Counted from the first letter of the stretch, positions 7,262 to 21,080 are shown. The stretch is 64,000 nt of DNA from IMGVR_UViG_3300033997_000092:186001-250000, one strand, 5' to 3'. Notes: generated by a model not told the origin, from the letters alone. Translations and numbers: made by a program.

Positions 7262-7285
7262 AAAGTATCCAGAGTTGGATCCTAC

Positions 7286-7621
7286 TCAGTAGGTAGGCTC
7301 GTTGTTGTTTTGTTCAATTCCAGTACGTACACCACCGTCTTTATTCAACATACTGTCAATCATATAGCTGATGCTGATAAACGTGAGCATACTCGGGTTA
7401 GGATCGGTTAACAGGATACCTAAATAACTTGTCAACACACCGAAGATAACAAGAACACTGTTGCCTTTATTTGTAGTCCAGTACTTGACCCAATCCAAAT
7501 TTCCCTGCACACATTTTTTAACATAGTGAGCAGCTACTCCCAAGAAAGTAATCAACAAGGACAGTACGTAATAGTCCCATGTATAGTTTGCTAAGGGTCC
7601 TAATAAAATGGATGAATCCAT
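7286..7621 (-). CDS. Holin candidate
   Basis: 111 aa, two to three hydrophobic segments, charged C-terminal tail, SD AGGAG, near the spanin genes. Confidence 0.55.
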   Translation of the reverse strand: MDSSILLGPLANYTWDYYVLSLLITFLGVAAHYVKKCVQGNLDWVKYWTTNKGNSVLVIFGVLTSYLGILLTDPNPSMLTFISISYMIDSMLNKDGGVRTGIEQNNNEPTY

Positions 7622-7637
7622 AAAACACTCCTAATAA

Positions 7638-7967
7638 TTAAACTGTTTCGCAGATCCAGTGGACTTGAATTCCTCCATTCCACGGTTCTTCGATTTTACC
7701 TACTGTATACCTGCTCCTTATAGTAGCAGCTTCGTACTCAGGCACAACTGTCCCTAGAACTACGTTATCCATTTGACCTAAAGGCTCACCTGTACTTATT
7801 TTTGTATACCAGCGGTAGTTATCCCATACCCACTCGTACACATCAGAAGAAAGCCAAGCACCTATCATACGACTGTCGCCAGAGCCACCCCGGTTAAAAT
7901 AACATACCGATTGGGGCAACTCAGGCTCAACGTCTTCTATAGGCCTATAGGAATGTATTGTTAACAC
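7638..7967 (-). CDS. Small protein, probable divergent family D member (D2)
   Basis: GTG start with SD AGGAAG. N-terminal HSYR..E.E....VC resembles D1/D3. Confidence 0.6.
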   Translation of the reverse strand: MLTIHSYRPIEDVEPELPQSVCYFNRGGSGDSRMIGAWLSSDVYEWVWDNYRWYTKISTGEPLGQMDNVVLGTVVPEYEAATIRSRYTVGKIEEPWNGGIQVHWICETV

Positions 7968-7988
7968 TTTAACTTCCTGTTGTTGTGT

Positions 7989-8528
7989 TTAAATAACGAA
8001 ATTGATTGTCATGTCCGGCATTTTAATCTGTTGGCCTACAACAACATTCAATTGAGACAGTTCAAGATCGGCTCCAGAATCAGCCAAGCCACAAGTACCG
8101 TGAATAATAAAATTCGTTTGGGCCGCAGCGGCTGTACTGTTTGTATAGTCTGAGTTACTAAAACATAGTGTAAAGCAACCAATCGTTCCAACTTGTGTCG
8201 CTTTGAACACATCAGCACGTTTAGAGAATGCCAAGATACGTTGCAGAGGATTATCGCCCAAGTAACGATCATCAAAGTTCAGGAATACCATACGTGCTAA
8301 CTCGGTCTTCCCGTAGCTAGGCATACCTGTAGTAGCATTGAACGGCCATGTACTGTTGATAACCGTACCAGAGCGATGTGATTCATACATAGCTGCGAGT
8401 TGTACATCAGACAATTCGCCTCCTGTCCACAGACTCACTATACAATGGTTATTATTGCCTAAATGAGTTTGGATAGGAGAAGTGAACTGGCCTAACATAA
8501 GGCTCTTGGCCGTAATTGCAAATTCCAT
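7989..8528 (-). CDS. Short-type array paralog S6 (putative virion structural protein)
   Basis: Shared S motifs: SLWTGG near the N-terminus, GTIGCFTLC, GTCGLADSGADLEL. Confidence 0.7.
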   Translation of the reverse strand: MEFAITAKSLMLGQFTSPIQTHLGNNNHCIVSLWTGGELSDVQLAAMYESHRSGTVINSTWPFNATTGMPSYGKTELARMVFLNFDDRYLGDNPLQRILAFSKRADVFKATQVGTIGCFTLCFSNSDYTNSTAAAAQTNFIIHGTCGLADSGADLELSQLNVVVGQQIKMPDMTINFVI

Positions 8529-8540
8529 ACTGGACTCCTA

Positions 8541-9701
8541 CTACGATACTTTGATTGGGAACGGATTCAGGAGTTTGGGAACGATGTTCTCTGTACTCAA
8601 GAATGTGGTACGGTTTAACTCAATTTTTCCAGGACCTGTGCCAACTTCCGCAAGAATCATAGGATAGTAACTTACATTGGGGCTGAACTTACTGTTCTTA
8701 TCCGTCGCATACGTCGGGAAGCTCGGTGAGTAAGGGGTAATTAATGCCCATGTCGGAGTAAACGAATTGTTTTGCGGTGAAGCTGCTTTACCTAAACCAA
8801 AATCACTTAGATATAACGCCATAGAGCTGCCTTCACTCAAGCTTCCAGTTGACCACGCACGTATCAAGAACTTCGATGCCGTTACAGGGGCGTTTAAAGG
8901 TACTACTATATACGAAGTGTGGTTACCGGTAGAATATGACATAATTCCTACACTGGTCCAAGCAGTATCTGCCTCATTCCTGTAGTAGAACTGAATGTTC
9001 ATCGTTCTTGCACCGCTGCTATGGCCGTTGTTCTGTCCACTAGGTGGATGAATTCTGATTATTATTCTATCTACAGTGATAGGACTCCTATACTCCATAG
9101 CACTGTATCTGTCATTAGCGCGTATATATGAATGACCACCCACATAAGCATAGAGTTCAGGAGAACCATCTAGTCCTGGTCTTGGATCTAACCTTCTAGC
9201 TACTGTATACGTAGCTATGGATATGTCTGAATCTAATATAGGACCCGAGCTTGTATTTCCGTATAGCCAATAGTCCATTGGAAATACTGCGATTGACGAA
9301 TCCATTGTTCCTGAGGACAGAGCGCCTCCGAATGTAGAAGCATTGAAGCTCGTTAATCCTGTAGGAAGGTTTCTCGGGTGGAATATAGTATTTAGTGAGA
9401 GTGCGTCTGTACCAGAATTTACTAAGTTAATCGTATCATTTGCTTCTACGGTAGTTGCCAATTCTGTACTATACGCAATAATACCTTTTGCATTGTATTG
9501 GAGTGCTTTAAGGCGTGTGCCTGTCTCTCCGGTTTGCTGGGAGTCATCCAAGAAAGGCACATTATCAATACTTGAAGGAACGGCACCATCGAACAGAAAA
9601 ATGTTACCGCCGTACGTAACAGAGCTAGTCGCCACATTTTGGCTTACCGCTCTCAGCAATCCGCCTTTAAGACCTATATGCTTCATAAGAAAATTCTCCA
9701 C
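8541..9701 (-). CDS. Long-type array paralog L5 with inserted discoidin/F5-8-like domain
   Basis: IFLFDGAVP ... PTWALI ... EVGTG scaffold; insert with MEYRSPITVDRIII, WTSVG, VTASKFLIR. Confidence 0.7.
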   Translation of the reverse strand: MENFLMKHIGLKGGLLRAVSQNVATSSVTYGGNIFLFDGAVPSSIDNVPFLDDSQQTGETGTRLKALQYNAKGIIAYSTELATTVEANDTINLVNSGTDALSLNTIFHPRNLPTGLTSFNASTFGGALSSGTMDSSIAVFPMDYWLYGNTSSGPILDSDISIATYTVARRLDPRPGLDGSPELYAYVGGHSYIRANDRYSAMEYRSPITVDRIIIRIHPPSGQNNGHSSGARTMNIQFYYRNEADTAWTSVGIMSYSTGNHTSYIVVPLNAPVTASKFLIRAWSTGSLSEGSSMALYLSDFGLGKAASPQNNSFTPTWALITPYSPSFPTYATDKNSKFSPNVSYYPMILAEVGTGPGKIELNRTTFLSTENIVPKLLNPFPIKVS

Positions 9702-9710
9702 ATAATCCTG

Positions 9711-10040
9711 TTAAGGATCGATTTCATTTAATACACATAATTGGTAATACGTATAGGTTATGTCTTCCGATCTATACGCTCCCCGAGAACAACGACCCAC
9801 TACTTCCATGATAGGTTCAGCTAATATGCTGTTTATCGTGAATGTTCCTACTACATAAAACTCGAATGTTGGTGTTGTACCATTTGTTTGCCAGTGGTAT
9901 TGATTACCTTCTTCATCAGCGAAGTACCAGTAATGCCTATTAGATGCAGATAGCCTTTTCTTATAGATTACTTGGCCTTGACTTATACCACATACTTGTA
10001 CAGTTTCTTTTTCTTTCCTATATACATGCTGTGTTATCAT
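9711..10040 (-). CDS. Small paralog family D protein (D1)
   Basis: Start MITQHVY overlaps the upstream stop (ATGA); homologous to 6923-7261. Confidence 0.7.
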   Translation of the reverse strand: MITQHVYRKEKETVQVCGISQGQVIYKKRLSASNRHYWYFADEEGNQYHWQTNGTTPTFEFYVVGTFTINSILAEPIMEVVGRCSRGAYRSEDITYTYYQLCVLNEIDP

Positions 10041-10537
10041 TGTCTGTTTTCTTCCCATGCACGGCATCCCATAAGACGTAAAGCAGAATACATTGCCATT
10101 GTTTTACGTTTAGATACTCCATCTGCAATCAAGCCTAGCCTGAAAATCTGATCAGCTTGTTTCTGGTTAAAGAAATCTCCAGATGGATTTGGAACATCAT
10201 GTCTGTATAGCAGATCATGAATTACAGATGCACGTAATCCAGAGCCGAAAGGTGGAAACAGAGACCAAAGGCTACGTGGGCTACTAATCAAATCTGTTCC
10301 GAATCCTTCCAAAGCAACCAAATCTACTGTGCGGAAGTTACACACGTACGGAGATTCAATTACACATTTCTTGTCCATATCCCAGCAAAACTGAAAACCA
10401 AAGTCTTCAACAAGCTCGAATTTATATCCACCTGGGAATGAATACAACTTTAAATCGCCGACAAACACAGGTGCATGCGGTACACCTTGTTTTGTCTCTG
10501 TGACAGTTATTTCATACATAGAAATTGGAGTGGACAT
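10037..10537 (-). CDS. DUF1353-family protein
   Basis: GFGTDLISSPRSLWSLFPP...ASVIHDLLY...ADQIF...MYSALR is the DUF1353 pattern. Start MSTP has SD GGGAG. Confidence 0.8.
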   Translation of the reverse strand: MSTPISMYEITVTETKQGVPHAPVFVGDLKLYSFPGGYKFELVEDFGFQFCWDMDKKCVIESPYVCNFRTVDLVALEGFGTDLISSPRSLWSLFPPFGSGLRASVIHDLLYRHDVPNPSGDFFNQKQADQIFRLGLIADGVSKRKTMAMYSALRLMGCRAWEENRQ

Positions 10538-10556
10538 TGCTGCCCACTCCCTCATA

Positions 10557-11048
10557 TTATGGAACGCGAATTTCCAAATCTGTTATCTTGTAGACTTTGC
10601 CCGATTCAGATAAAGCAGACAGTACCTCAAGATCAGACCCTGAGCCTATATCACCGACACTTCCAACAAACGCTTGGTACACGTTCGCATTAGTTGTATA
10701 CGTCGGGTTGTTAATCGCGCTATCCACATACATAAACACGAACCAATTCAACGCACCTGAGGAGTGCAGTGTGTAATCCTGAGCTAACGCTTCGAGGCTC
10801 CACTTTTTGAAGTTCTTGTTAATGATCTGGACCGTAGCTGTGTTTGGATATGCAGCACTAAGACGTAACGTACCTAGTGCTTTCAAGCTGTTGCTTTGAA
10901 TTACACCAGATGTTTGAATCAGTGCTTCAATCTGAGCTTTGGTCGGCATAGTACCACCGAACAACCAGATTACTTTCTTTGATGCAGATACTACCTGCTC
11001 ATGTCTGGCTGTAGAAAGATGCTTCATACCTAAAGAGAACTTAGCCAT
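10557..11048 (-). CDS. Short-type array paralog S5
   Basis: IWLFGGTMPTKAQ, LNWFVF, GSVGDIGSGSDLE. Confidence 0.7.
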   Translation of the reverse strand: MAKFSLGMKHLSTARHEQVVSASKKVIWLFGGTMPTKAQIEALIQTSGVIQSNSLKALGTLRLSAAYPNTATVQIINKNFKKWSLEALAQDYTLHSSGALNWFVFMYVDSAINNPTYTTNANVYQAFVGSVGDIGSGSDLEVLSALSESGKVYKITDLEIRVP

Positions 11049-11049
11049 A

Positions 11050-11916
11050 TTAAATCTCCGTTACTTCAGGTTTCAAACGGGCATACATCAAAGCAGCCTG
11101 TTGTTGTGGAAGTATCTGTGCTTTGCTTAAACGCACTTCTGCTGTTGTAGCAGGTCCGCCTGCAGTACAGATCAGGAACGGTGTAGATGCTCCTGCTGGC
11201 ACATAGGCGCTGTTGTATGTAACAGGCTTAATGATTGCCCACGTTGGAACAACAGCACTGTTATTTGGATTCACTGAGGTATAAGGAACGAACTTAGTGA
11301 TACCGCAACTTCCTACAGCAAACCGCACTATCAAACGTGTTGCACCTGGAGCAGATACTGGACGTAATACAGTGCTGCCTATTTGGGTAAACAACTCAGT
11401 TTCAGTTGTGCCGTTGTAGGCAAACACGGTGTACTGAGTGTTGCTATCTGCGGTTACAGTAATGTGTGACACATCTGCTGTATTCCATAGATCGAAGTTT
11501 AATTGGTTTGCGCCAGCCGCCGCAGTGAACGCATATTGAAGTCTCGCAGACAGTACATCCAATTTACGTTCCAGGTTTAAGCTTGGTGTTGTTCCAGTTA
11601 AATCACGCATACCTATAGCATACACAGGTACACCGTTTACCTCAGTTTCTGCTTCGTCGCGGCCTGCAGCAGGATAACCATAAAGGCGCTGTGTCTGAGC
11701 AAATTCCATCATGTGTGATGGAGATACAAGTAACGAAGAAGAAACACGTAAAGCCTCTACTGCATTTTGCAGCAAGCCGCTATCTGTGTTTGGGTCAAAT
11801 GATATTGCTTCTTCGGATTCTGGAACTGTACCTGCAAAAACAAACACGTTCCATCCAGAAGTACCTGCATAGTCCTGCATACTCTGCAAGATATTAGAGT
11901 GACAGAATAAAAACAT
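11050..11916 (-). CDS. Long-type array paralog L4
   Basis: VFVFAGTVPES ... VPTWAII ... CTAGG scaffold around a beta-rich insert. Confidence 0.7.
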   Translation of the reverse strand: MFLFCHSNILQSMQDYAGTSGWNVFVFAGTVPESEEAISFDPNTDSGLLQNAVEALRVSSSLLVSPSHMMEFAQTQRLYGYPAAGRDEAETEVNGVPVYAIGMRDLTGTTPSLNLERKLDVLSARLQYAFTAAAGANQLNFDLWNTADVSHITVTADSNTQYTVFAYNGTTETELFTQIGSTVLRPVSAPGATRLIVRFAVGSCGITKFVPYTSVNPNNSAVVPTWAIIKPVTYNSAYVPAGASTPFLICTAGGPATTAEVRLSKAQILPQQQAALMYARLKPEVTEI

Positions 11917-11917
11917 A

Positions 11918-12463
11918 TTAGCCGCCCCATGTGTAGTTGAATGTCAAGTCGTTGCCTTTCAGCACCTTTGACATATCGATTGCACTTCCAGCAAGGACCA
12001 TATCAGCATTGCTGCCAACATCGCCTATAGTACCGATACCAACAAAGTAAGCAGGCTGGCTCGAGGTCATATCAACAGCAGCCGTAGCACAAGTTGCGAA
12101 CAAGAACCAACTAACTGTACCGCCAGAAATTTTAGTAAATTCTTCAGCACGTTCACTCAGAGGGAAACGGAACTTGGTCGGACCTATGTTGTGACCTTGT
12201 AGTGTGTTCTCATAACGGCACCACGCCTTCAACGTACTGCCTAATGCTACTGCCCACTGATTTAACAGAGTCAGGCTGTACTGGCCACGCACTGTACTGA
12301 ACTGAATACCTGAACCGGCAACAGTGCTAAACATAGCCGCTTCAAATTGTGCTTTGGTAGGCATCGGGCCATTATAAATAGCCATCATCTTGCGGTACGC
12401 ACCTGAAGTAACGTAATCAGCGTTTGCTAAAGGTACTAAACCGTCCGTTGCTAAAATTGTCAT
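11918..12463 (-). CDS. Short-type array paralog S4
   Basis: AIYNGPMPTKAQ, GTVSWFLF, GTIGDVGSNADM. Confidence 0.7.
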   Translation of the reverse strand: MTILATDGLVPLANADYVTSGAYRKMMAIYNGPMPTKAQFEAAMFSTVAGSGIQFSTVRGQYSLTLLNQWAVALGSTLKAWCRYENTLQGHNIGPTKFRFPLSERAEEFTKISGGTVSWFLFATCATAAVDMTSSQPAYFVGIGTIGDVGSNADMVLAGSAIDMSKVLKGNDLTFNYTWGG

Positions 12464-12474
12464 GCGAAGGCTCC

Positions 12475-13416
12475 TTACTCTACTTCGTTAACTACGTTGC
12501 CGAACACTTTCAGGTGAACCAGCGAGAAACTATCACTGATGCCTGCACGACGACGATTTAATACAGCTACTTTACCGTCAAGTGGACCACCTGCACTCAG
12601 CACCATAGCAGGCACCTGTGTAGCATCGGCAGACTTGTAAGTTGCTGTTGTTGGGTTAGCTGGAACCAATACACACCACGTTACGTCTGTAGTAGTTTTG
12701 TCGAACGTGTTTGATGGCAGCTCACTCGCAAAGAAACGAATGAAGCGATACTGCAATGTGTTAGCGGCCACTGTACCTGTATCATTCAGGAAACGAACAC
12801 GCCACAGACGCGCACTAATTGGAGCGAATGTAATTTCAATGCCCGCAGCGTTGTATGTTTTCACTGCTACGTTTGATGCCGCTGGAACCCATACAGATCC
12901 ATCGTAGTATTCGACGTTGATGTTGCTGGCATTACGAGTGGTTGCACTCATGTTAGCAAACAGTACCTTGTTGATACTGCACACATCGCCAAAATCAAAT
13001 TGAATGAAACGACCTGTGACTAAGTGTGTCGATGCTGTTGCTGTAACGGCGCTATCCTCTAAGCCATTAACATAGCCAACAGGTTCATCCATACCAGGAA
13101 TGTCAGTAGATATTGCCTGAGGCAAACACTGTATACCTGCAGTACCGTTATTGAGGCGTTCTCCGTGCATTTTCAAAGTAAACAAGGTCGACGCATGTTC
13201 AAAAGCTAACAGTTCTTGGCCGTAACCAGCGCTGTTAACCGCAGTAACACGAATACCAGCAATAGCATTGGCGAAGATACTGTCCATGTTAGCTAACTGG
13301 AATGGAAACGTACCCATAGACTCAGGTACTGTTCCTGACATTAAAAACATATTCCAGGCAGTGCCTCCTTTAAGAAGCATAGACTGAGCTTGAGCAAATT
13401 GTGCGGCTACGTACAT
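12475..13416 (-). CDS. Long-type array paralog L3 with discoidin/F5-8-like insert
   Basis: MFLMSGTVPES scaffold; FIQFDFG..VEYYDGSVW..ISARLWRVRF insert; VTWCVL..LSAGG. Confidence 0.72.
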   Translation of the reverse strand: MYVAAQFAQAQSMLLKGGTAWNMFLMSGTVPESMGTFPFQLANMDSIFANAIAGIRVTAVNSAGYGQELLAFEHASTLFTLKMHGERLNNGTAGIQCLPQAISTDIPGMDEPVGYVNGLEDSAVTATASTHLVTGRFIQFDFGDVCSINKVLFANMSATTRNASNINVEYYDGSVWVPAASNVAVKTYNAAGIEITFAPISARLWRVRFLNDTGTVAANTLQYRFIRFFASELPSNTFDKTTTDVTWCVLVPANPTTATYKSADATQVPAMVLSAGGPLDGKVAVLNRRRAGISDSFSLVHLKVFGNVVNEVE

Positions 13417-13426
13417 AACTCTTACC

Positions 13427-13969
13427 TTATGTCAGTGAGAAATTAAATTCTGAAGTGGATGCTTCCATCAGAACTACAGTGATTGGCGATACAGTTATTT
13501 CCATGGAGGATACATCGCTATAGAATATTTCACGCACTGCAGGTGATGTAGAGAATTGTGATTCACCTTCACCTACCAATGTAATACGTGAATCCAACAA
13601 GCGTCCATCGAGATACTGTTCAGGCGTTACGTTGACTGTGATGTTATTCGCATCATAAGTAGCAATGTTTGACTTATACCCAAGCATTTCATTCAGGTTA
13701 AAGTCTTCAGGTGCACCAAAGAAGTACAGACCTATATAACCGTAGAACAGACTTGTATCTTGATTGAGTGTAGCTTCCGCTTCTTGGAAAACACTCAACG
13801 ATACTTGGATACCATTGATGTCAATGTTCTGGTCGATTTCACTTGTTATAAGTGGGCGGAAGTTAGTGTCTCCTTCCAGTACACCCAACATAGTTGTTGA
13901 GATTGTGTCTGGAAAAAGTACACCAGGCTCGAACCGTTGAGCATAGTAATTATGAACTTGGATAAACAT
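13427..13969 (-). CDS. Array family C protein (C2)
   Basis: N-terminal RFEPGVLF and C-terminal IFYSDV..VSPI are shared with 16090-16431. Confidence 0.6.
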   Translation of the reverse strand: MFIQVHNYYAQRFEPGVLFPDTISTTMLGVLEGDTNFRPLITSEIDQNIDINGIQVSLSVFQEAEATLNQDTSLFYGYIGLYFFGAPEDFNLNEMLGYKSNIATYDANNITVNVTPEQYLDGRLLDSRITLVGEGESQFSTSPAVREIFYSDVSSMEITVSPITVVLMEASTSEFNFSLT

Positions 13970-13972
13970 AAA

Positions 13973-14509
13973 TTACCCCAGCAGGTTACTGATGTTCACA
14001 CGGAAGTCAGCTATACTGTATTTCTTACCTACAGTTACAGCCAGTGAGCCTACTTTAATGTCTTCTGTTGATGCTGGTAATCCTACAGTACAACAGAATA
14101 ATGTTCTGGCACTTGTAGTTGCTGATCCGTGTAAAGCTATTACCATAAGGCCCACATCACCAGCAGCAAGACCTTGCATGAAGTCAGTACGTTGGCTGAA
14201 CAAGAACGCTGCTCCTGAAGGACCTTCATGGCGCTTTTGTGTGAATGACGTCATCGCAGTAATAGCACCCGCAGTTGTTACCACAGAACCCAAGCGAGTT
14301 CGCGTAGACACCAGATTGGTATTCACTAAATCTAAGTTGATAATACCAGTCGTAGCGTTTTTAGCAGTGCCATTTATATAGTTCATTTCAGCAGGAGTAA
14401 TTGCAGGACCTGTGTAAAAGAAAATCGATACACGATCTGTATTCGCTAAATCGTTCCTGTGGAATGGGTACTTCAAGAAACTCAACATCGTCTTATTTGC
14501 TAAAAGCAT
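13973..14509 (-). CDS. Short-type array paralog S3
   Basis: MLLANK, FFYTGP, CTVGLPAS; closest to S2. Confidence 0.7.
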   Translation of the reverse strand: MLLANKTMLSFLKYPFHRNDLANTDRVSIFFYTGPAITPAEMNYINGTAKNATTGIINLDLVNTNLVSTRTRLGSVVTTAGAITAMTSFTQKRHEGPSGAAFLFSQRTDFMQGLAAGDVGLMVIALHGSATTSARTLFCCTVGLPASTEDIKVGSLAVTVGKKYSIADFRVNISNLLG

Positions 14510-15057
14510 TACGACTCTCCTAATAAGTCTGTCAGCCTGACATACATATCATTCACACGGATTACATCGTTGGCTGCAATTGTTGTATTTTCTATCTCAA
14601 TCTCTTTGCCAGATCCAGGTAGACCTACTGTCATAAGTACCGCTGCGTGAATAGGACCGTTGTAGTTGTCGTACAGCATACACAACATTAGTCCAGTCGT
14701 ACCTGCTTGAAAACCTTTCAGTACCGAGGTCACTACTGGCCGCAAACGTAAACAGAACTCGTCTACTGTATTGCCATACGCTTTGTTCACTAACAACTGA
14801 CCGCTAACCGTAGTTCCACTGATAGAAGTGTAGGCTAAGTAACGGCGAATGCTGTTTAAATATGTTGTGAACGCACTGCCTCCTGCCATTGCCCCCGTTC
14901 CAGTTGTAACAGCAGTTTTAAGTGCGGCTAATTCTCCTGCAGTCAGTTCTGGACCTTCGTACAGGTAAGTCACTGCGTAACTTGCAAATGCTCCGCCTGC
15001 TGCCGCCCGGAAAGGATTCATCAAATAGGCAGTCATGCCTTTGTTTGCTAAGAACAT
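14509..15057 (-). CDS. Short-type array paralog S2
   Basis: MFLANK, YLYEGP, MTVGLPGSG. Confidence 0.7.
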   Translation of the reverse strand: MFLANKGMTAYLMNPFRAAAGGAFASYAVTYLYEGPELTAGELAALKTAVTTGTGAMAGGSAFTTYLNSIRRYLAYTSISGTTVSGQLLVNKAYGNTVDEFCLRLRPVVTSVLKGFQAGTTGLMLCMLYDNYNGPIHAAVLMTVGLPGSGKEIEIENTTIAANDVIRVNDMYVRLTDLLGES

Positions 15058-15074
15058 TAGGACTCTCCTATTTA

Positions 15075-16082
15075 TTAGAACAACTGCCCGTAAGCTAAGT
15101 ACAGATCAAACTTACTATCGTTGTTGGCTTGCACAGGAGCGTTGAAGCGCAGACGTCCATTTCCACCAATACCAGAAGCACTTACCAAGAAACAGAAATC
15201 ATCTGTGTCAAACGGGCTATTGCCGTAAGAGTCAATCAGTTTTGCCTTTAAATTTGTCAACACTGTTGCTGATGTGAAATCAGGAACGATAACTGCCCAA
15301 GTAGGAACAGCTAAGTTGTATTGTACATCACCAGCTTCATAATCAAACTTACCGAAGTAGGCAAATGCCATAAGCACGGTACCTGCTGTACCTGACGCCA
15401 GTTTACGAATACGGAAGCGTGTTGCAGTTACTTCTGGGAAGCGAATGATTTGGTAACCTGTTACGTTCAGTACAGAAGTAACCAGCTCTACCCAAGCACT
15501 ACCGTTATAGTATTCGATGACCATCTGACGCATAAACGTGTTTGCAGCAGTACCTTGTTTGATACCGAAGCAGTTAACGTCTATAGGACGATTATATTCA
15601 AATTCAAAAACTTCGTTGGTGTTTGTGCTTACAGTCACATAACTTGTTGTCAGACCTGCGAAGTTTGCTTCGGAACTCTGCTTGTACATAAACAGTTCAA
15701 ACAGTTTGTGGTCACGGTAATCACCATACGCTTTAAAATTCGATGGGCCATAAACCAAGTGATTGGCGAAATTGGTACTTACAACACTTCCGCCTTGATA
15801 CACGTTCACAGTCTCACCAGCATATTTGGCAACTATGTCTGCGCCTTTCAACAAAGAACTACGCTGAGTCAATTGCACTTCAGATACAGATGGATACGAC
15901 AGTGTTGCCAGGAAAGCGTTTTTGCAGTTTTGGATAAGGTTAGCTGCGTTTGGAGCAAAACCAATACCATCGAAATCTGTAGGAGGTGTGCCTTCGAAAG
16001 CATACACCAGCATGTTTGTGTTTGCTGGAAAGTTTACTTGCATACCAGCAATCATTGTTTCAGTTGCGCCAAATACGTGCAT
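15075..16082 (-). CDS. Long-type array paralog L2 with discoidin/F5-8-like insert
   Basis: VYAFEGTPP scaffold; FEFEYNRPIDV..IEYYNGSAWV..VTATRFRIR; VPTWAVI. Confidence 0.72.
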   Translation of the reverse strand: MHVFGATETMIAGMQVNFPANTNMLVYAFEGTPPTDFDGIGFAPNAANLIQNCKNAFLATLSYPSVSEVQLTQRSSLLKGADIVAKYAGETVNVYQGGSVVSTNFANHLVYGPSNFKAYGDYRDHKLFELFMYKQSSEANFAGLTTSYVTVSTNTNEVFEFEYNRPIDVNCFGIKQGTAANTFMRQMVIEYYNGSAWVELVTSVLNVTGYQIIRFPEVTATRFRIRKLASGTAGTVLMAFAYFGKFDYEAGDVQYNLAVPTWAVIVPDFTSATVLTNLKAKLIDSYGNSPFDTDDFCFLVSASGIGGNGRLRFNAPVQANNDSKFDLYLAYGQLF

Positions 16083-16089
16083 GTTTACC

Positions 16090-16431
16090 TCACGATAAGT
16101 TTAACACTATTGTAAAATTACTCGATTGTCCGACCGAAGCAACGATTGGTGTGACACCAGCTTCAAAATCTAAGACATCGCCATAGAAGAATCCATCTAA
16201 CACAACTGGACTCACATTAACAGTGAAGTTAGCAACACTGTCTTGGTAAAACAGATTGTTTTCATTTTGACTTGCATTCGGGAATAAAGGAGCACTCACT
16301 CCTTCGAGAGGCCTCAAAATTCTAAATGTCTTTGGGTCCAGCGCTACAGATACCTCTACTGTCTCACCAAACAAAGCACCAGAATCAAAACCAGGACCAT
16401 AACGTCCACTTGCTTTTACTAAGTTGCTCAT
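16090..16431 (-). CDS. Array family C protein (C1)
   Basis: GFDSGALF and FFYGDV..VTPI are shared with C2. Confidence 0.6.
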   Translation of the reverse strand: MSNLVKASGRYGPGFDSGALFGETVEVSVALDPKTFRILRPLEGVSAPLFPNASQNENNLFYQDSVANFTVNVSPVVLDGFFYGDVLDFEAGVTPIVASVGQSSNFTIVLNLS

Positions 16432-16931
16432 ATCACGTGCCTCACTTTAAAGTTCAATGCACGGTATGTTTGACCTAATGTCATAGATGGATTGTTGATT
16501 TTCAAATCACCATCATCATTTAAGTCCGTTATAGTTCCTTTCATTGAGAACAGTGAATTACCGTTTACGTTGTAGGCTACGTTTGATGCACGGTCATACA
16601 GCAAGAACCAGTCAGGTACTCCAGAGGTCAGTACAGTTACAGGAACTCTGCCTAACTGAAAGTTTATATTCAAGTCAGGTGCACTTCCTATATTTGGATA
16701 GGTTGCTTTATCAATATCGATGTAACCAACTATCTTACCTCCACGTGCAACAATAGCAGAGTACAGTCCTGCAAAGCTGCCGAGAAAAGGATTAGATGTG
16801 TTAGTTATGTAAGCACCAACTTCCTGTGCAGTCATATAACCTTTTTCAATCAACACGAACTGATAACGAAAGCCTGAATTTTTCAAAGGATATTGGTAGA
16901 TTAATGCAGCCGCATCTTTATTCATTCTCAT
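16428..16931 (-). CDS. Short-type array paralog S1
   Basis: Start MRMNK overlaps the L1 stop (ATGA); VPDWFLL, GTITDLNDDGDLKI. Confidence 0.68.
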   Translation of the reverse strand: MRMNKDAAALIYQYPLKNSGFRYQFVLIEKGYMTAQEVGAYITNTSNPFLGSFAGLYSAIVARGGKIVGYIDIDKATYPNIGSAPDLNINFQLGRVPVTVLTSGVPDWFLLYDRASNVAYNVNGNSLFSMKGTITDLNDDGDLKINNPSMTLGQTYRALNFKVRHVI

Positions 16932-17845
16932 GTTGCAGTTGCCTCCAGCTTTATGTCTTCTGTTATGAAAACAATAGGAGTATAAACAGACGGCTCTTCC
17001 CTGTTTGTTTCGCATTCTGATTTATCGAATGCAAATACTGGACACCGAGTTGTTGACCAATCTAACGCAGTAGGATATCCTAAGATATTGTACATGATTG
17101 GACAAAGAAGGATTGTTTGTATTGGACGAGATACGCAGCGTCTCTGGTCTGTTGTAGCGTAGAATGTGTCAATTGACCATCCTACTTGGCCAGCACTAGC
17201 AACAGCAACAGTCAGTTTTATGCCTGAGCATACGCGCTCAACCAATCCACTTACTATATTTGTCCCAGAGCCTACAATCAAACCCAAGTCTTGCCAACTT
17301 CCATTCACAAGACACTCAAGGCGTACTGATGTTGGGCGTTGGTTTGTAGCACTGGCTATACCTGGAGCGTATTTAACATCTTTCACAAAGCACGGTTCAA
17401 ATGTCTGCACTATTTCAGCAGATATGAAATCCGTTCCCCATACAATTGGAATGTTCCTTTGTGGAGCAGCCAAGCTGTAGTGTGGCGTGTAGAATGCGAA
17501 TATGTCTCTTGGGACAGTTGTGCCAAAGTACATTGATTCAGGACAAACACGTATTTCTTGCTGACCGTCGTCACTATAGGCTCCTAAGTGTTTAACCAAA
17601 GGCGCTCCATATGTTGTAGTCAACTTGTTGTAAGATATTGTCCCTAATCTGCCTGCCGCAGACAATGTATGTGAGGCAATGCAATGTTCGGTGAAATACT
17701 TCAGAGCTTCTGGTGAAGCTGGAGATTCCATCAGAATATCCAACTCACTTGTATCCATGAACAATGCAAGCCACGTATAAGCTGACCCAGATTGTCCTGC
17801 TAGTCCATTAGCAATACTTGCGTTCCAGTGAATTAATTCCATCAA
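16928..17845 (-). CDS. Long-type array paralog L1 (most divergent)
   Basis: 305 aa; insert with RLECLVNGSWQDLG...SGIKLTV; first gene of the array. Confidence 0.55.
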   Translation of the reverse strand: MMELIHWNASIANGLAGQSGSAYTWLALFMDTSELDILMESPASPEALKYFTEHCIASHTLSAAGRLGTISYNKLTTTYGAPLVKHLGAYSDDGQQEIRVCPESMYFGTTVPRDIFAFYTPHYSLAAPQRNIPIVWGTDFISAEIVQTFEPCFVKDVKYAPGIASATNQRPTSVRLECLVNGSWQDLGLIVGSGTNIVSGLVERVCSGIKLTVAVASAGQVGWSIDTFYATTDQRRCVSRPIQTILLCPIMYNILGYPTALDWSTTRCPVFAFDKSECETNREEPSVYTPIVFITEDIKLEATAT

Positions 17846-17866
17846 GAATCTCCAACGTAGGACTGC

Positions 17867-18433
17867 TTAACGTGGAACTACCAGGTTACCGCAGATGGTG
17901 ATGTCGATATTTGCTAATGTTGCGTCACGAATCTCAGGAGACTTCATACGGAATATTTGACCACGTTCAAATACTATTGAAGTACCGCCTGTAGATGCAA
18001 ACACGCCTGAAGTGGCACCAGCAGCAAACGTCAGTGTGCCTACTTGGGTCGCTACTCCACCTACCACACGCTCAACAATGAATTGAGAAGTTGCAGTTGC
18101 CGCAGTTGTTGCTACAGCCAGAGAGTTTGCAAAGTTTGCACCAATTTGGAAAGTACGTGCGGCTATGTGTTTACACACAATGTCCAAAGACTTCGGACGG
18201 TCGAATATAGTTAGACCTATATCATATACGTCGAATTCAGTGTTTTCCGCCAGCACCCACTTGTTCAATTGGGCATTGAAAATGTATACGCCATTCGTGA
18301 TAACCACACTGCCTATTACTTCAAACAGTTGTTTATCGACAGCACCGACAACAGAAGGCAATACTGAGCCACTGTTTTCTGCTGTACGGGACAGGCGACT
18401 TGATTCTAACAAGCTTAAACCATCAGATAACAT
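17867..18433 (-). CDS. Putative virion fibre-associated protein
   Basis: C-terminal VGTLTFAAG...FERGQIFRMKSP..DATLANIDIT resembles phage fibre accessory domains; SD AAGGAG. Confidence 0.5.
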   Translation of the reverse strand: MLSDGLSLLESSRLSRTAENSGSVLPSVVGAVDKQLFEVIGSVVITNGVYIFNAQLNKWVLAENTEFDVYDIGLTIFDRPKSLDIVCKHIAARTFQIGANFANSLAVATTAATATSQFIVERVVGGVATQVGTLTFAAGATSGVFASTGGTSIVFERGQIFRMKSPEIRDATLANIDITICGNLVVPR

Positions 18434-18443
18434 TGTTCGCTCC

Positions 18444-18671
18444 TTAATTGACGCGAGCTTCGCCTGTTAATGGGACAGAGAATTCAACACGCAAAGTGTT
18501 TGAATCTACCGATGAAACTGACTTAGGCAGTATCTTTTGGAGCTTGCCTTGCCAGTTAACAAACACGTCCACAAGAACATTAGTTCTTCCAAGATTGTGT
18601 GGGATGCTCCACACAGTGTTTGCATGATCTTGTTTGTGCGAATAGCCTGCACCACGAACTTTAAGTGTCAT
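18444..18671 (-). CDS. Single copy of a ~65-aa 'H-N-L-G' fibre module
   Basis: WSIPHNLG..VLVDV..ILPKSV..DSNTLRVEF..TG; the same module occurs in three neighbours. Confidence 0.65.
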   Translation of the reverse strand: MTLKVRGAGYSHKQDHANTVWSIPHNLGRTNVLVDVFVNWQGKLQKILPKSVSSVDSNTLRVEFSVPLTGEARVN

Positions 18672-18683
18672 AGTTAGGCCTCG

Positions 18684-19304
18684 TTACATACAAAGAACAG
18701 TACCAGTCACTGCATTAGTGAATGTCAATACTGTTTGGTTAGTTGTTGTGTGTTGGACTGAGCTAGGTAATAACTCAAATCCATCCGATGTAATGAAACG
18801 GATGATAGGAGCATATCCCAGCATGTGGTTCACAGTTACTTCTGTTGTAGCCACGTCCACTTCCATTTCATATGCAACATCAGGCTTAGTCATGCCGTCC
18901 AGGTTACCTATCATTATGATAGCGTGACCAGTAGTTGCTTGCGCGAAAGTAATCTCAACTGTATCAGCATCAATGCCTTCAACGCTGTCAGGAACAACAA
19001 GCTGGTTATCGCTGTTGTATACTTGGACAATTACTTTAGCACTGTTCATACCGTGTGGGACAGTCCACACAGCACTTGCAGAGTCTTGCTGGTGTATGTA
19101 AGTATTACGCTCTTGCAGCAGAGGTACCCACAGTACACTTTGACCATACGCTATAGCAAACAGCAAACGACCATCTACTACAGCTACACGGTTTGGAACA
19201 GCATATTGTACGCCAGCAGAGTCATCACCTAAAACAACATGACTCAAAGCATTACCTTGCATGTCCAGACCGCCGAACATCGTTAATCCGCCTAAGACCT
19301 TCAT
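18684..19304 (-). CDS. Fibre-associated protein with two 'H-N-L-G' modules
   Basis: True start MKVLGG (SD AGGTG), downstream of the terminator; modules WTVPHGMN... and VTVNHMLG.... Confidence 0.65.
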   Translation of the reverse strand: MKVLGGLTMFGGLDMQGNALSHVVLGDDSAGVQYAVPNRVAVVDGRLLFAIAYGQSVLWVPLLQERNTYIHQQDSASAVWTVPHGMNSAKVIVQVYNSDNQLVVPDSVEGIDADTVEITFAQATTGHAIIMIGNLDGMTKPDVAYEMEVDVATTEVTVNHMLGYAPIIRFITSDGFELLPSSVQHTTTNQTVLTFTNAVTGTVLCM

Positions 19305-19329
19305 GGATTCACCTTTGGTTCGTTGGGAC

Positions 19330-19360
19330 AAAGAAAAATGGGGAGACAAAGCTCCCCATT
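19330..19360 (-). terminator. Intrinsic terminator after the 566-aa fibre gene
   Basis: Minus strand AATGGGGAG-ctttgt-CTCCCCATT followed by TTTCTTT. Confidence 0.8.
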
Positions 19361-19379
19361 CATCAATCACTGAGGCCTA

Positions 19380-21080
19380 TTAGGCAGCAGGAGCAACAGT
19401 TGTTACGATCACTTTGCACTTAACGGCGATAGCGAAAGTAACTGTCAGGCTGTTACCATCTACGTAGGTGATGGTGTCTGGCAGAACAACTTCGTCTGAT
19501 TCGTCAACAACAGTTACCTGGCAGTATTTCGTGCCAATGTTGTGTGTAACAGTGTGTGAAGCAGAAGCAGTGTCAGTACCTGTTGCAGTGCTGTCGTAGA
19601 TGAACTGGCCAGCGCTGATACGAGTGTTGACGTTGCTGATTGAAGTGTTGATACCAGATACTGCGGTATCTAAGTCCAGCTTACGTGCTGGGTTAGCATC
19701 GGCAGTAGGAGCAATCACAGTAATCGCGCCTGTGAAATCAGCACCATCTAAACGGCCGTACAATGTGTCCAGATGTGCTTCATTCACTTTAACGCCAGTA
19801 GCATCAACAGTGATAGAAGAATCTGAAGCCAGAACAGCCAGGTCAACACCTGAACCGCCAGTTAAACCGTTACCAGCAACGTCACCTAACATAGTAGATG
19901 CAACGCCCTGAGAAGCGATTTGTAAACCACCAGAACCGTCGAAGCTCAAGCTGTTGTTCGCGCCGACTTTGATAGCCAGTTGGCCATTGCTGTCAGTAGT
20001 TTCGTCAGTACCGTTGATAGTCAGCATCAAACCGCGGTTCAGGTACAGATCTAAACCAACTTCGTCTGAAGGCAGTTCAGCGATACCAGCACCTAAGTTA
20101 ACGCTGATTGTGTTACCAGATTTGCTCAGACCGATACCAGCATTCACGCCAGCCAGACCACCGAACTCACCCCATGCGCCGCCCTGCAGAGCTAACCAGG
20201 TACCAGCAGTTGTATTCCATGCCAGCGCACCGTTAGGGCCTGATACAGAAATGTCATAGCTGATAGACTGGATTGCACCAGTAGCATCAACAACTACGAT
20301 GTCACCAGCAGCAGGAGTCAGAGTGTTTGGATCTGTGAAGTCTGAACCATCTACATAGATGTAACGGCCAGCAGCATCAACGAAATCGCTTTCGTAACCA
20401 ACTACGTCAGCTTGGAAGTCCAGGCCAGCGATAGCATTTTGCACGTCGATTAAACGGGCAGCATCTGTAGCGTTTTCTGGAGTAGCCAGACCGATGATTT
20501 TGTTGTTGTTCATCGCTAACTGACCGAACATGCTGTCGCCAGCTTGGTTTACTGGAGTGTAGCCCAGATTGTCTTGCTTGCTGTCAATTTGGGTCTGTAC
20601 GTTATCAGTCACACCTGACAGGTAACCCAGCTCAGTAGTAGTTACAGCAGATGCAGCAACTTTACCAGAACCATCAGACACTAAAGCCTTGCTTGTATCC
20701 AGGTCAGAAGAAACGATGGTTGTAGCAGCACCAGTGACAGTATCCTGTTTGGTACCTAAACGAGTTTCAACGTGACCCTTAGATACAGCAGCCAGGTTAT
20801 CTGAACCAGACTGATCAGTGCTTGATAACAGCAAGTCGGCTTCCATAGCCACTGTGCCGTCTTTCTTCACGTAATCGTTCAGGTTGCCACCTTTAGCAAC
20901 TGTCTGTACGCTGGTACCATCGTAATACTTCAGCGCTTTTTCAGTTGAGTTGTACCACAGGCGAGACTCATAGCCAGCTAACTCGCCAACCGTTGGGTCA
21001 GTTGCCAGGTTTTCTGGTTTCATGTTGCGGATGGTACCGCCGCCGACTAATGTGATATTACCAATTACTTGCATCGTCAT
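19380..21080 (-). CDS. Abundant fibre/whisker-like virion protein
   Basis: 566 aa, G/A/T/D-rich, KQD..TGAATTI and TELGYLSGVT fibre segments, C-terminal H-N-I-G module. Codon choice (GGT/GCT/CTG/AAC) and a terminator immediately downstream suggest high expression. Confidence 0.6.
   Translation of the reverse strand: MTMQVIGNITLVGGGTIRNMKPENLATDPTVGELAGYESRLWYNSTEKALKYYDGTSVQTVAKGGNLNDYVKKDGTVAMEADLLLSSTDQSGSDNLAAVSKGHVETRLGTKQDTVTGAATTIVSSDLDTSKALVSDGSGKVAASAVTTTELGYLSGVTDNVQTQIDSKQDNLGYTPVNQAGDSMFGQLAMNNNKIIGLATPENATDAARLIDVQNAIAGLDFQADVVGYESDFVDAAGRYIYVDGSDFTDPNTLTPAAGDIVVVDATGAIQSISYDISVSGPNGALAWNTTAGTWLALQGGAWGEFGGLAGVNAGIGLSKSGNTISVNLGAGIAELPSDEVGLDLYLNRGLMLTINGTDETTDSNGQLAIKVGANNSLSFDGSGGLQIASQGVASTMLGDVAGNGLTGGSGVDLAVLASDSSITVDATGVKVNEAHLDTLYGRLDGADFTGAITVIAPTADANPARKLDLDTAVSGINTSISNVNTRISAGQFIYDSTATGTDTASASHTVTHNIGTKYCQVTVVDESDEVVLPDTITYVDGNSLTVTFAIAVKCKVIVTTVAPAA

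What the first reader, a model, noticed from the sequence alone, without database searches (positions are those of the whole stretch)
7989..17845. Ordered Long-Short gene cassette array: a modular display system for carbohydrate-binding domains
Seen: in transcription order L1-S1-C1-L2-S2-S3-C2-L3-S4-L4-S5-(DUF1353)-D1-L5-S6. L and S share one scaffold ([FY]xG..P near the N-terminus; [PV]xW[FA]hh; G[TS][VI]G..GS.AD near the C-terminus). L copies carry an extra 120-200-aa discoidin/F5-8-like insert. All five L genes are immediately followed by an S gene, and three of five are preceded by a C or D gene. The copies are highly diverged. Known: discoidin domains bind glycans, and some jumbo myoviruses carry hair-like appendages. 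Inference: each L+S(+C/D) unit builds one appendage type with its own glycan specificity, giving a combinatorial adhesin repertoire separate from the tail fibres.
Basis: partly seen in the sequence, partly recalled or inferred. Interest (0 to 1): 0.72.

Follow-up and report, generated by a model that had tools for sequence, protein, structure and literature searches.

The report
Paired garland-like tail proteins, half with lectin domains
An uncultivated giant phage carries a conserved row of eleven related genes, alternating long and short, that most likely make two-part building blocks for the outer tail or baseplate; at least two of the five long partners display a sugar-binding domain, and no one has described this arrangement.

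Summary
Window 7989-17845 (minus strand) encodes five long (L) and six short (S) paralogues, two C proteins, a DUF1353 protein and an orphan. Every L is immediately followed by an S (permutation p=0.002), and no copy lies elsewhere in the 261-kb genome.

- **L versus S:** L is the S scaffold split by an insert. The insert is a CBM32/discoidin fold in L3 (VIA-align Z 15) and L2. The evidence is weak for L1 and only transitive for L4 and L5.
- **New link:** the S model matches one solved protein, the 'garland' protein gp014 of Agrobacterium phage 7-7-1 (Z 9.6, next best 5.6). Intermediate sequences join the two families.
- **Known relatives:** garland, T4 gp8 and phi812 arm-segment proteins are dimers placed on tail fibres or baseplate arms.
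- **Pairing:** L3+S4 is predicted to form a heterodimer (ipSAE 0.87, best control 0.01) through the scaffold, leaving the CBM32 domain free.
- **Conservation:** the core order L1-S1-C-L2…C2-L3-S4-L4-S5 recurs in five related metagenomic phages. L-S arrays also occur in NCTB, Y3, AD1 and Yoloswag.

Best reading: position-specific L-S heterodimers of the tail-fibre network. Separate 'hairs' are unsupported: hairy phage Lu11 has no detectable S homologue. Virion presence is untested.

The parts
16928..17842 (-). L1, 304 aa, a divergent long paralogue
   Evidence: Its orthologue profile matches the L profile at probability 96.7%, E 4e-10. Similarity of its insert to the L3 CBM32 domain is weak (probability 54%). 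Orthologues occur in five related contigs.
16428..16931 (-). S1, 167 aa, short paralogue; its ATG overlaps the L1 stop (ATGA)
   Evidence: S HMM 3e-43. Weak hit to phrog_3758, E 0.0017. The junction was read.
16090..16431 (-). C1, 113 aa, unknown function; start overlaps the S1 stop
   Evidence: A gene of 88-130 aa sits at this position in all five close relatives. Its N-terminal motif is weakly shared with C2.
15075..16082 (-). L2, 335 aa, long paralogue with a CBM32-like insert
   Evidence: L HMM 1e-91. Insert against the L3 CBM32 profile: probability 96.5%, E 1e-9. Pfam PF22633 E 0.044.
14509..15057 (-). S2, 182 aa, short paralogue
   Evidence: S HMM 2e-35. S2-S3 blastp 3e-13.
13973..14509 (-). 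S3, 178 aa, short paralogue; tandem duplicate of S2
   Evidence: S HMM 5e-44.
13427..13969 (-). C2, 180 aa, unknown function; conserved immediately upstream of L3
   Evidence: C2-family HMM hits lie in the same position in L002-L006. No Pfam or PHROG hit. The protein-atlas search gave only weak Ig-like leads.
12475..13416 (-). L3, 313 aa: scaffold residues 1-87 and 236-313, CBM32/discoidin insert about 88-235
   Evidence: AlphaFold2 model, pLDDT 84. Foldseek hit to CBM32, E 1e-7. VIA-align Z 15.0 over residues 93-231. PF22633 E 1.3e-5. 25 orthologues found.
11918..12463 (-). S4, 181 aa, garland-like fold; predicted partner of L3
   Evidence: AlphaFold2 model, pLDDT 85. Match to 9rkv_A at Z 9.6, 127 of 139 residues aligned. 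phrog_17152 E 4e-8. Heterodimer prediction with L3: ipSAE 0.87 against 0.01 for the best control.
11050..11916 (-). L4, 288 aa, long paralogue with a shorter insert of unproven fold
   Evidence: L HMM 6e-68, and S HMM hits at the N-terminal, middle and C-terminal parts. No profile match to the L3 CBM32 domain.
10557..11048 (-). S5, 163 aa, short paralogue
   Evidence: phrog_17152 E 1.7e-12. S HMM 2e-51. Many orthologues at 45-62% identity.
10037..10555 (-). DUF1353 protein, 172 aa
   Evidence: PF07087, 59.4 bits, above the 22.5-bit cut-off. phrog_1158 'tail assembly chaperone' E 5e-24. It lies after the array in L002, L005 and L006.
9711..10040 (-). D1, 109 aa, orphan protein
   Evidence: No homologue in any fetched locus. 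No family hit.
8541..9701 (-). L5, 381-386 aa, long paralogue. In this genome it lies downstream of DUF1353.
   Evidence: L HMM 2e-62. It falls in a clade with L2 and the 368-377 aa L genes of relatives (SH-aLRT support 98). CBM32 identity is not shown directly.
7989..8528 (-). S6, 179 aa, short paralogue
   Evidence: S HMM 4e-43. Weak hit to phrog_3758, E 0.006.
17867..21080 (-). Conserved fibre-like genes just upstream of the array (566, 228, 75 and 188 aa)
   Evidence: phrog_16122 'virion structural protein' E 4e-124 and phrog_7049 'tail fiber protein'. The same four genes precede the array in PaBG, AD1, Yoloswag and Y3.

Best explanation
The array encodes the subunits of a set of pseudo-symmetric heterodimers. 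Each heterodimer has one L and one S protein.

- **Fold:** L and S share one fold, that of the 'garland' proteins of Agrobacterium phages 7-7-1 and Milano. Those papers say the garland fold resembles T4 gp8, A511 gp105 and the phi812 arm-segment protein.
- **Known behaviour of that fold:** these are small dimers of the periphery of contractile tails. They wrap the distal ends of fibres and spikes, or are threaded like beads on an extended scaffold chain.
- **What L adds:** L carries a CBM32/discoidin domain inserted in a loop of the scaffold. The dimer interface uses the N- and C-terminal scaffold segments of both partners, so the lectin-type domain points outward.
- **Role of the paralogues:** the five or six units are old and are kept separately in every relative. 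They are therefore most likely distinct, position-specific segments of the tail-fibre network or baseplate periphery, not interchangeable cassettes. Collectively they would present several glycan-binding domains to the host surface.

Shown here: the gene families, their order and its conservation, the folds by prediction, the remote homology to garland proteins, and the operon context.

Inferred: heterodimer formation (predicted only), presence in the virion, location, glycan binding, and any role of C1, C2, D1 and DUF1353.
For: - **Fold of S.** The S4 model matches 9rkv_A at Foldseek E 3e-4 and VIA-align Z 9.6, with 127 of 139 residues aligned and the next hit at Z 5.5-5.6.
- **Identity of that chain.** By length and by the paper's chain list, 9rkv_A is 7-7-1 gp014, the garland protein (PMC12796354).
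- **Sequence links to the garland family.**
  - gp014 and gp012 belong to phrog_3758 (E about 1e-36).
  - S1 and S6 hit phrog_3758 weakly.
  - The S profile against gp014/gp012 gives hhalign probability 84%.
  - A gp012+gp014 HMM scores up to 33 bits on proteins that the S profile retrieved at E below 1e-14.
- **Weaker structural cousins.** A511 gp105 gives Z 4.2 and the phi812 arm segment Z 4.3.
- **Published behaviour.**
  - The garland and arm-segment proteins are dimers.
  - Milano gp125 and gp127 are modelled as homo- or heterodimers.
  - phi812 arm segments are strung on the scaffold linkers (PMC10811340, PMC13433997).
- **L equals S plus an insert**.
- **CBM32 fold**.
- **Predicted L3-S4 complex.** ipSAE was 0.87, 0.84 and 0.88 against a best control of 0.01. 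That mark was reached by 58 of 80 solved complexes and 2 of 110 mismatched pairs. The interface lies outside residues 88-235 of L3.
- **Adjacency.** 27 of 33 L genes in the six closest genomes are immediately followed by a gene with an S domain.
- **Matching orthologue groups.** L groups u1-u4 have SH-aLRT support 96-100. S group u1 has 99, u4 has 95, and u3+u4 together have 95.
- **Operon context.** The array ends an operon that runs from baseplate wedge genes through tail-fibre genes.
- **Slot replaced in PaBG.** In PaBG the same slot holds unrelated adhesin-annotated proteins.
Against: - No proteomic or imaging data place any L or S protein in a virion. The Y3, AD1, Yoloswag and NCTB records call them hypothetical.
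- The PaBG proteome lists 14 proteins under another gene numbering, and PaBG has no detectable L or S homologue.
- The complex score is the model's own confidence. It may reflect likeness to known dimers, and non-cognate pairs were not run.
- The L scaffold could not be superposed on the S model directly. Per-orthogroup profile matches of L to S are only moderate (probabilities 12-49%).
- The match to gp8-type proteins is weak (Z about 4).
- The array lies about 20 kb downstream of the candidate wedge and scaffold genes. In T4, A511 and phi812 the equivalent gene lies next to them.
- The CBM32 fold says nothing about the ligand, and L3 falls just below Pfam's cut-off.
Confidence: 0.55

Rival explanations
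1. Each L+S(+C/D) unit polymerises into its own hair-like appendage on the tail sheath, independent of the tail fibres. Together the units would form the hairs of the 'hairy Myoviridae'.
For: - The window's clade includes Y3, AD1 and the JA phages, which are described as hairy (PMC6143709; PMC13282480).
- S homologues are present in Y3, AD1 and NCTB.
- Dimers of the gp8 type can form beads-on-a-string chains (PMC10811340, PMC13433997). Such a chain could look like a curly fibre.
- The molecular make-up of the hairs is not described in any paper I could read.
Against: - Lu11, reported as hairy, and PaBG have no detectable S homologue in their whole genomes.
- The only solved homologue sits on the fibre tips at the baseplate, not on the sheath (PMC12796354).
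- Nothing ties one unit to one appendage.
- The window's phage is uncultivated, so its morphology is unknown.
Confidence: 0.17
2. L and S are not parts of the virion. They would be assembly factors or chaperones for the many fibre proteins encoded upstream, working with the DUF1353 protein and discarded after assembly.
For: - The DUF1353 protein is annotated as a tail assembly chaperone in PHROGs, and it lies within the array.
- There are no virion data for L or S.
- There are many fibre paralogues upstream.
Against: - The 7-7-1 homologues gp014 and gp012 are annotated as virion structural proteins. gp014 is modelled in the cryo-EM map of the virion (PMC12796354).
- A surface-exposed lectin-type domain has no obvious use in a chaperone.
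Confidence: 0.12
3. The array is a switchable or recombining cassette system, of the shufflon, diversity-generating-retroelement or gene-conversion kind, that changes host range.
For: Only the repeated, cassette-like look of the locus.
Against: - There are no DNA repeats longer than 32 nt and no meaningful inverted repeats in 7500-18500.
- Paralogues share only about 20-30% protein identity, while orthologues share 32-62%.
- The insert is no more variable than the scaffold (0.56 against 0.54 and 0.52).
Confidence: 0.02

Closest known systems
Garland proteins of Agrobacterium phages 7-7-1 (gp014, gp012) and Milano (gp125, gp127); phrog_3758
   Same: - Same fold (Z 9.6, nearly full length).
- A shared C-terminal motif: a conserved Trp strand followed by a Gly-rich loop and an acidic residue.
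- Intermediate sequences link the two families.
- Both are small proteins present as paralogue pairs, encoded directly downstream of tail-fibre genes.
- Both are dimeric, with homo- or heterodimers proposed for Milano (PMC10811340; PMC12796354).
   Different: - S proteins are 20-40 residues longer and fall in another PHROG (17152).
- There are eleven copies here instead of two.
- Half of the copies carry a CBM32-type insert of about 150 residues.
- L and S alternate strictly.
- Location in the virion is unknown.
T4 gp8, Listeria phage A511 gp105 and Staphylococcus phage 812 gp118 (arm segment, also called baseplate-wedge-3 to tail-fibre-network connector)
   Same: - The Milano and phage 812 papers describe these proteins as sharing the garland fold.
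- The S4 model aligns with 6hhk_B and 9fko_A over 115-121 residues.
- They are dimers that reinforce an extended scaffold chain and carry receptor-binding proteins.
   Different: - The structural match here is weak (Z 4.2-4.3).
- Those phages use one gene, placed next to the scaffold gene, to make several identical dimers.
- Here there are many diverged paralogues, about 20 kb away from the candidate scaffold gene (1546 aa, window 38370-43010).
CBM32 / F5/8 type C (discoidin) carbohydrate-binding modules
   Same: L3 residues about 88-235 superpose on many CBM32 structures (Z 14-15, rmsd 2.2-2.6 Å). 26 of 39 L-family members hit PF22633 at E 0.01 or better.
   Different: - The domain is inserted inside another domain rather than appended to an enzyme.
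- The window's L3 scores 26.1 bits, under the 27.8-bit cut-off.
- The ligand is unknown.
- The fold is not shown for L4 and L5.
Hyperbranched or multi-receptor-binding-protein tail-fibre systems of jumbo phages (for example phiKp24)
   Same: Many paralogous host-recognition-type genes lie in one late operon of a jumbo myovirus (my own knowledge; phiKp24 is described in PMC13282480).
   Different: Those systems use large trimeric depolymerase fibres joined through adaptor domains. Here the repeated unit is a small dimer with a lectin-type domain. No homology was found.

Membership tests
Garland protein family (phrog_3758; 7-7-1 gp014/gp012, Milano gp125/gp127) | Fold of the solved member (9RKV chain A) | tested here: met
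   S4 model: Foldseek E 3e-4, VIA-align Z 9.6, 127 of 139 residues aligned, next hit Z 5.5-5.6.
Garland protein family (phrog_3758; 7-7-1 gp014/gp012, Milano gp125/gp127) | Significant match to the family's sequence profile | tested here: inconclusive
   - Only S1 (E 0.0017) and S6 (E 0.006) hit phrog_3758.
- S4 and S5 belong to phrog_17152.
- hhalign of the S profile against gp014/gp012 gives probability 84%.
- Intermediate sequences score up to 33 bits with a two-sequence garland HMM.
Garland protein family (phrog_3758; 7-7-1 gp014/gp012, Milano gp125/gp127) | Forms dimers (homo- or heterodimers of paralogues) | tested here: met
   By prediction only: L3+S4 ipSAE 0.87 against a best control of 0.01, with a pseudo-symmetric interface. 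No experiment.
Garland protein family (phrog_3758; 7-7-1 gp014/gp012, Milano gp125/gp127) | Sits around the distal ends of tail fibres and spikes in the virion | not testable with these tools
   Needs cryo-EM or proteomics of a cultured relative.
Garland protein family (phrog_3758; 7-7-1 gp014/gp012, Milano gp125/gp127) | Genes lie directly downstream of tail-fibre genes | tested here: met
   The array follows the genes of 566, 228, 75 and 188 aa that match fibre-type PHROGs. In 7-7-1, gp014-gp012 follow the fibre gene gp015.
gp8 / gp105 / arm-segment (baseplate-wedge-3 to tail-fibre-network connector) proteins | Fold similar to A511 gp105 or phi812 gp118 | tested here: inconclusive
   Z 4.2 (6hhk_B) and Z 4.3 (9fko_A), within the range of unrelated matches. 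T4 gp8 is not among the listed hits.
gp8 / gp105 / arm-segment (baseplate-wedge-3 to tail-fibre-network connector) proteins | Gene adjacent to the wedge-3 / arm-scaffold gene | tested here: not met
   The wedge genes and the 1546-aa tail protein lie at window 38370-44926. The array starts at 17845.
gp8 / gp105 / arm-segment (baseplate-wedge-3 to tail-fibre-network connector) proteins | Dimers threaded on linkers of a scaffold protein by beta-strand addition | not testable with these tools
   No further complex prediction was available. No structure of this clade exists.
CBM32 / F5/8 type C domain | Beta-sandwich fold of CBM32 | tested here: met
   - L3: Z up to 15.0 over residues 93-231.
- L2: by profile, probability 96.5%.
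- L1: weak.
- L4 and L5: not shown.
CBM32 / F5/8 type C domain | Pfam gathering threshold (PF22633 or PF00754) | tested here: not met
   L3 scores 26.1 bits against a 27.8-bit cut-off, and L2 14.8 bits. Several orthologues carry a precomputed PF22633 hit.
CBM32 / F5/8 type C domain | Binds a carbohydrate | not testable with these tools
   Needs glycan arrays or binding assays.
DUF1353 (PF07087) | Pfam gathering threshold | tested here: met
   59.4 bits against a 22.5-bit cut-off.
Hair appendages of 'hairy Myoviridae' | The component is present in every phage reported as hairy within the clade | tested here: not met
   The S profile finds 5 to 7 places in Y3, AD1 and NCTB, but none in Lu11 or PaBG. 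Lu11 is reported as hairy (PMC6143709).

The most novel reading that the evidence does not exclude
The L-S heterodimers are the beads of the curly 'hairs' that define the hairy jumbo myoviruses. In this reading the dimers are threaded by beta-strand addition onto an extended carrier chain. The carrier could be a C-type protein or a long fibre or scaffold protein. Each bead would expose a CBM32 domain. The result would be a new kind of polymeric, polyvalent glycan-binding filament built from gp8-like parts.
Probability: 0.15. Interest if true: 0.8.

Novelty: new variant of a known kind. Interest (0 to 1): 0.6.

Why it matters
- **Function for unannotated genes.** The result gives a testable structural role to about ten 'hypothetical' genes per genome in a whole clade of jumbo phages. 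The clade includes NCTB, Erwinia phages Y3 and Yoloswag, Dickeya phage AD1 and many metagenomic relatives.
- **Size of the family.** The S family has at least 826 clusters at 50% identity in public data.
- **Evolution of a small building block.** The garland / gp8-type dimer, known as one or two genes in small myoviruses, appears here expanded into a fixed series of heterodimers, with a lectin-type domain grafted into half of them.
- **Significance if confirmed.**
  - This would be a new way for phages to build a multivalent sugar-binding surface on the tail.
  - It would give a concrete candidate to test as the component of the unexplained tail decorations of these phages.
  - It could inform understanding of host range in phages studied for fire blight and soft rot control.

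Tried and rejected
- **DNA search.** Megablast of the region against 50,697 phage records gave no match.
- **tblastn.** S5 gave no match, and L3 matched only NCTB at 24% identity. This method is too insensitive for these families.
- **Sequence search of solved structures.** The S profile gave only chance hits. The link to 9RKV came from fold comparison.
- **AlphaFold DB clusters and ESM Atlas.** Searches with the S4 model or sequence gave nothing with a name. The atlas search with the L3 model found only the CBM32 part.
- **C proteins.**
  - C1 and C2 had no Pfam or PHROG hit.
  - The atlas search gave only weak Ig-like leads for C2.
  - Neither resembles 7-7-1 gp013, the gene between its two garland genes.
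  - C2 is not related to S or L.
- **PaBG syntenic genes.** They show no relation to L or S.
- **PaBG virion proteome.** It lists only 14 proteins under another gene numbering, so it is uninformative here.
- **Y3 paper.** It is not held in the library.
- **Recombination-cassette idea.** Rejected, because there are no repeats.
- **Extra paralogues.** None found elsewhere in the genome.
- **Sequencing runs.** They show only that the genome comes from subsurface and wastewater metagenomes. The 'RNA' runs may hold DNA, so I did not lay reads.
  - I could not superpose the L3 scaffold on the S4 model, because no coordinates are available.
  - I could not run non-cognate pairs, because only one complex job is allowed.

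Full report
**Source and setting**

The window is bases 186001-250000 of a single 261,032-bp contig. The contig is held in subsurface and wastewater metagenomes, so the host is unknown. A 566-aa protein just upstream of the finding places the genome among the jumbo myoviruses related to:
- Pseudomonas phage PaBG and phage NCTB;
- Erwinia phages Y3 and Yoloswag;
- Dickeya phage AD1.

The PaBG paper calls this the 'Lupandier group' (PMC7412058). Day et al. and a 2026 review describe several of its members as 'hairy Myoviridae' (PMC6143709, PMC13282480).

The finding sits at the far end of a minus-strand operon of about 39 kb. In transcription order the operon holds:
- baseplate wedge genes at 43000-44926;
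- a 1546-aa tail protein;
- many tail-fibre-type genes;
- the array;
- small membrane proteins and a lipoprotein;
- a terminator-like hairpin at 6049-6031.

**The observation**

Fifteen tightly packed genes fill 7989-17845, and most have GGAG-type ribosome-binding sites.
- **Corrected starts.** I moved three starts: L1 to 17842, S1 to 16931 (ATGA overlap with the L1 stop) and D1 to 10040.
- **S family.** The six S proteins form one family by blastp, with E-values down to 1e-15.
- **L family.** L2 to L5 form another family. L1 joins it only at profile level (probability 96.7%, E 4e-10).
- **Adjacency.** Every L is followed by an S, with permutation p = 0.002.
- **Confinement.** A six-frame HMM scan of the whole genome finds no L, S or C2 copy outside the array.
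- **No recombination cassettes.** There are no DNA repeats or inverted repeats of note, and the paralogues share only about 20-30% identity. They are old duplicates.

**L is S plus an insert**

- The pooled L and S profiles align over the C-terminal 65 columns (probability 93.8%, E 1.8e-7).
- Several L proteins hit the S HMM at both ends. One example matches at residues 10-48 and again at 313-355.
- Per-orthogroup matches are only moderate. I could not superpose the models directly.
- The order of secondary-structure elements agrees between the two models.

An AlphaFold2 model of L3 (pLDDT 84) shows that residues about 88-235 form a CBM32/discoidin beta-sandwich:
- Foldseek E is 1e-7 against CBM32 of AlyQ;
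- VIA-align Z is 15.0 against a galactose-binding CBM.

Other evidence on the inserts:
- Pfam PF22633 scores L3 at 26.1 bits, just under its 27.8-bit cut-off.
- 26 of 39 L-family members hit PF22633 at E 0.01 or better, which equals the number of L3 orthologues in that alignment.
- The L2 insert matches the L3 insert profile (probability 96.5%).
- L1 matches weakly (probability 54%).
- L4 and L5 do not match by profile. They rest on blastp alignments to L2 and L3 that span the region.

**What the scaffold is**

The S4 model (pLDDT 85) has one clear match among solved structures: chain A of 9RKV, 'Agrobacterium phage 7-7-1 tail fibers'.
- Foldseek E is 3e-4.
- VIA-align Z is 9.6, with 127 of 139 residues aligned. 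The next hit is at Z 5.5-5.6.

By length and by the paper's chain list, this chain is gp014, the 'garland' protein. [quoted passage not shown]

Sequence links between the S family and the garland family:
- 7-7-1 gp014 and its paralogue gp012 are members of phrog_3758.
- S1 and S6 hit that PHROG weakly.
- The S profile aligns with gp014/gp012 at probability 84%, over a shared Trp-strand and Gly-rich-loop motif.
- A two-sequence garland HMM scores up to 33 bits on proteins that the S profile had retrieved at E below 1e-14 from 1.84 billion representatives.

I conclude that S is a remote homologue of the garland proteins.

The Milano paper reports that:
- gp125 and gp127 form homo- or heterodimers;
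- their fold resembles T4 gp8 and A511 gp105 (PMC10811340).

The phage 812 paper shows six dimers of the equivalent 'arm segment' protein strung on linkers of an arm scaffold protein. The linkers complete the beta-sheets between dimers (PMC13433997). In my search those proteins appear only weakly (Z 4.2-4.3).

**Pairing**

The one complex prediction allowed, L3 with S4, gave ipSAE 0.87, 0.84 and 0.88. The best of three controls gave 0.01. That mark was reached by 58 of 80 solved complexes and 2 of 110 mismatched pairs.

The contacts involve:
- L3 residues 1-17, 31-41, 63-68, 252-274, 283 and 304-313;
- the equivalent parts of S4 (1-18, 37-45, 57-62, 92-96, 124, 139-145, 154, 175-181).

This is a pseudo-two-fold dimer that leaves the CBM32 insert free. 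It is a prediction, and it may partly reflect likeness to known dimers. Non-cognate pairs were not tested.

Independent support comes from comparative genomics:
- In the six closest genomes, 27 of 33 L genes are immediately followed by a gene with an S domain.
- L-S junctions are overlapping or a few bases apart.
- L orthologue groups u1-u4 are clades with SH-aLRT support 96-100.
- Among their S partners, u1 has support 99, u4 has 95, and u3 and u4 together have 95.

**Conservation and variation**

- **Core order.** L1-S1-C-L2 … C2-L3-S4-L4-S5 recurs in all five related contigs, L002 to L006.
- **Variable zones.** Content varies before L1, between L2 and C2, and after S5. Extra L5-type genes occur there, sometimes without an S partner.
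- **Fusions.** Some S domains in relatives are fused to C-terminal Laminin_G_3 or F5/8-C domains.
- **Wider relatives.** NCTB, Y3, AD1 and Yoloswag have alternating L-like and S-like genes in the same slot.
- **Exceptions.** PaBG and Lu11 have no detectable homologue. In PaBG the slot holds unrelated proteins of 587-990 aa, some annotated as adhesin-like.
- **No fast-evolving insert.** Among the 26 L3 orthologues the insert is no more variable than the scaffold (identity 0.56 against 0.54 and 0.52).

**Interpretation**

The best-supported reading is that the array encodes position-specific L-S heterodimers of the tail-fibre network or baseplate periphery. These are garland-like or arm-segment-like parts that display lectin-type domains.

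The idea that each unit is a separate hair-like appendage, apart from the tail fibres, is not supported:
- the solved homologue sits on fibre tips;
- Lu11, reported as hairy, has no detectable S homologue.

The hair idea is not excluded, because beads-on-a-string chains of such dimers could form a filament. The roles of C1, C2, D1 and DUF1353 remain open.

No paper I could find describes these families. All database records call them hypothetical.

**Verdict**

This is a real, conserved and previously undescribed variant of a known class of phage tail proteins. It is moderately to highly interesting, and virion localisation is the decisive missing piece.

Noticed in passing
window 6055-7621 (minus strand): Three or four small proteins, at least one with a clear membrane span, and a 179-aa lipoprotein (phrog_23384) close the operon. 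A terminator-like hairpin follows at 6049-6031. A lipoprotein ends the array in AD1, Yoloswag and Y3 too. This could be a spanin-like or lysis-related set.
   Followed up: partly
window 18444-21080 and 23646-24563: One domain of about 60 residues recurs in four neighbouring genes. It lies at residues 501-558 of the 566-aa protein, 89-157 of the 228-aa protein and 8-74 of the 75-aa protein. It also appears to recur in the 305-aa protein labelled 'HNH endonuclease' by PHROG. That label therefore probably reflects this shared fibre-type domain, not a nuclease.
   Followed up: no
window 25062-25853, 33288-33782, 33793-34440, 34444-35949: A second paralogue set lies in the same operon. Proteins of 263, 164, 215 and 501 aa all match the same stretch of the tail-fibre family phrog_8745.
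   Followed up: no
L004 3734-5599; L002 4783-6450 and 13138-14166: In related contigs an N-terminal S domain is fused to a C-terminal Laminin_G_3 domain (621 aa), an F5/8 type C domain (555 aa) or an unknown domain (342 aa). Each fusion gene follows an L gene. This is a second way of attaching a lectin-type domain to the same scaffold.
   Followed up: partly
L002 2252-2641 and 7014-7610: The two C-type proteins of this relative end in nearly the same alternating hydrophobic strand (…LSISISI). The window's C1 and C2 also end in alternating strands. This may be a strand that adds onto the L-S dimers.
   Followed up: no
window 7989-10067 compared with L005 and L006: Only in the window's genome does an L5-S6 unit, with the orphan D1, lie downstream of DUF1353. 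In L005 and L006 the L5-type genes lie upstream of DUF1353 and have no S partner.
   Followed up: partly
L007 (PaBG) 19069-33647: PaBG keeps the conserved genes of 560, 199, 70 and 186 aa but replaces the L-S array with unrelated proteins of 330-990 aa. These include products annotated as 'fibrinogen domain-like' and 'putative adhesin'. The 330-aa gene annotated 'tail sheath' at this position looks doubtful.
   Followed up: partly
window 26119-33231: The adjacent proteins of 1234 and 1123 aa share phrog_26008. The first also has a tail-fibre-like C-terminal part, so this may be another duplicated fibre pair.
   Followed up: no
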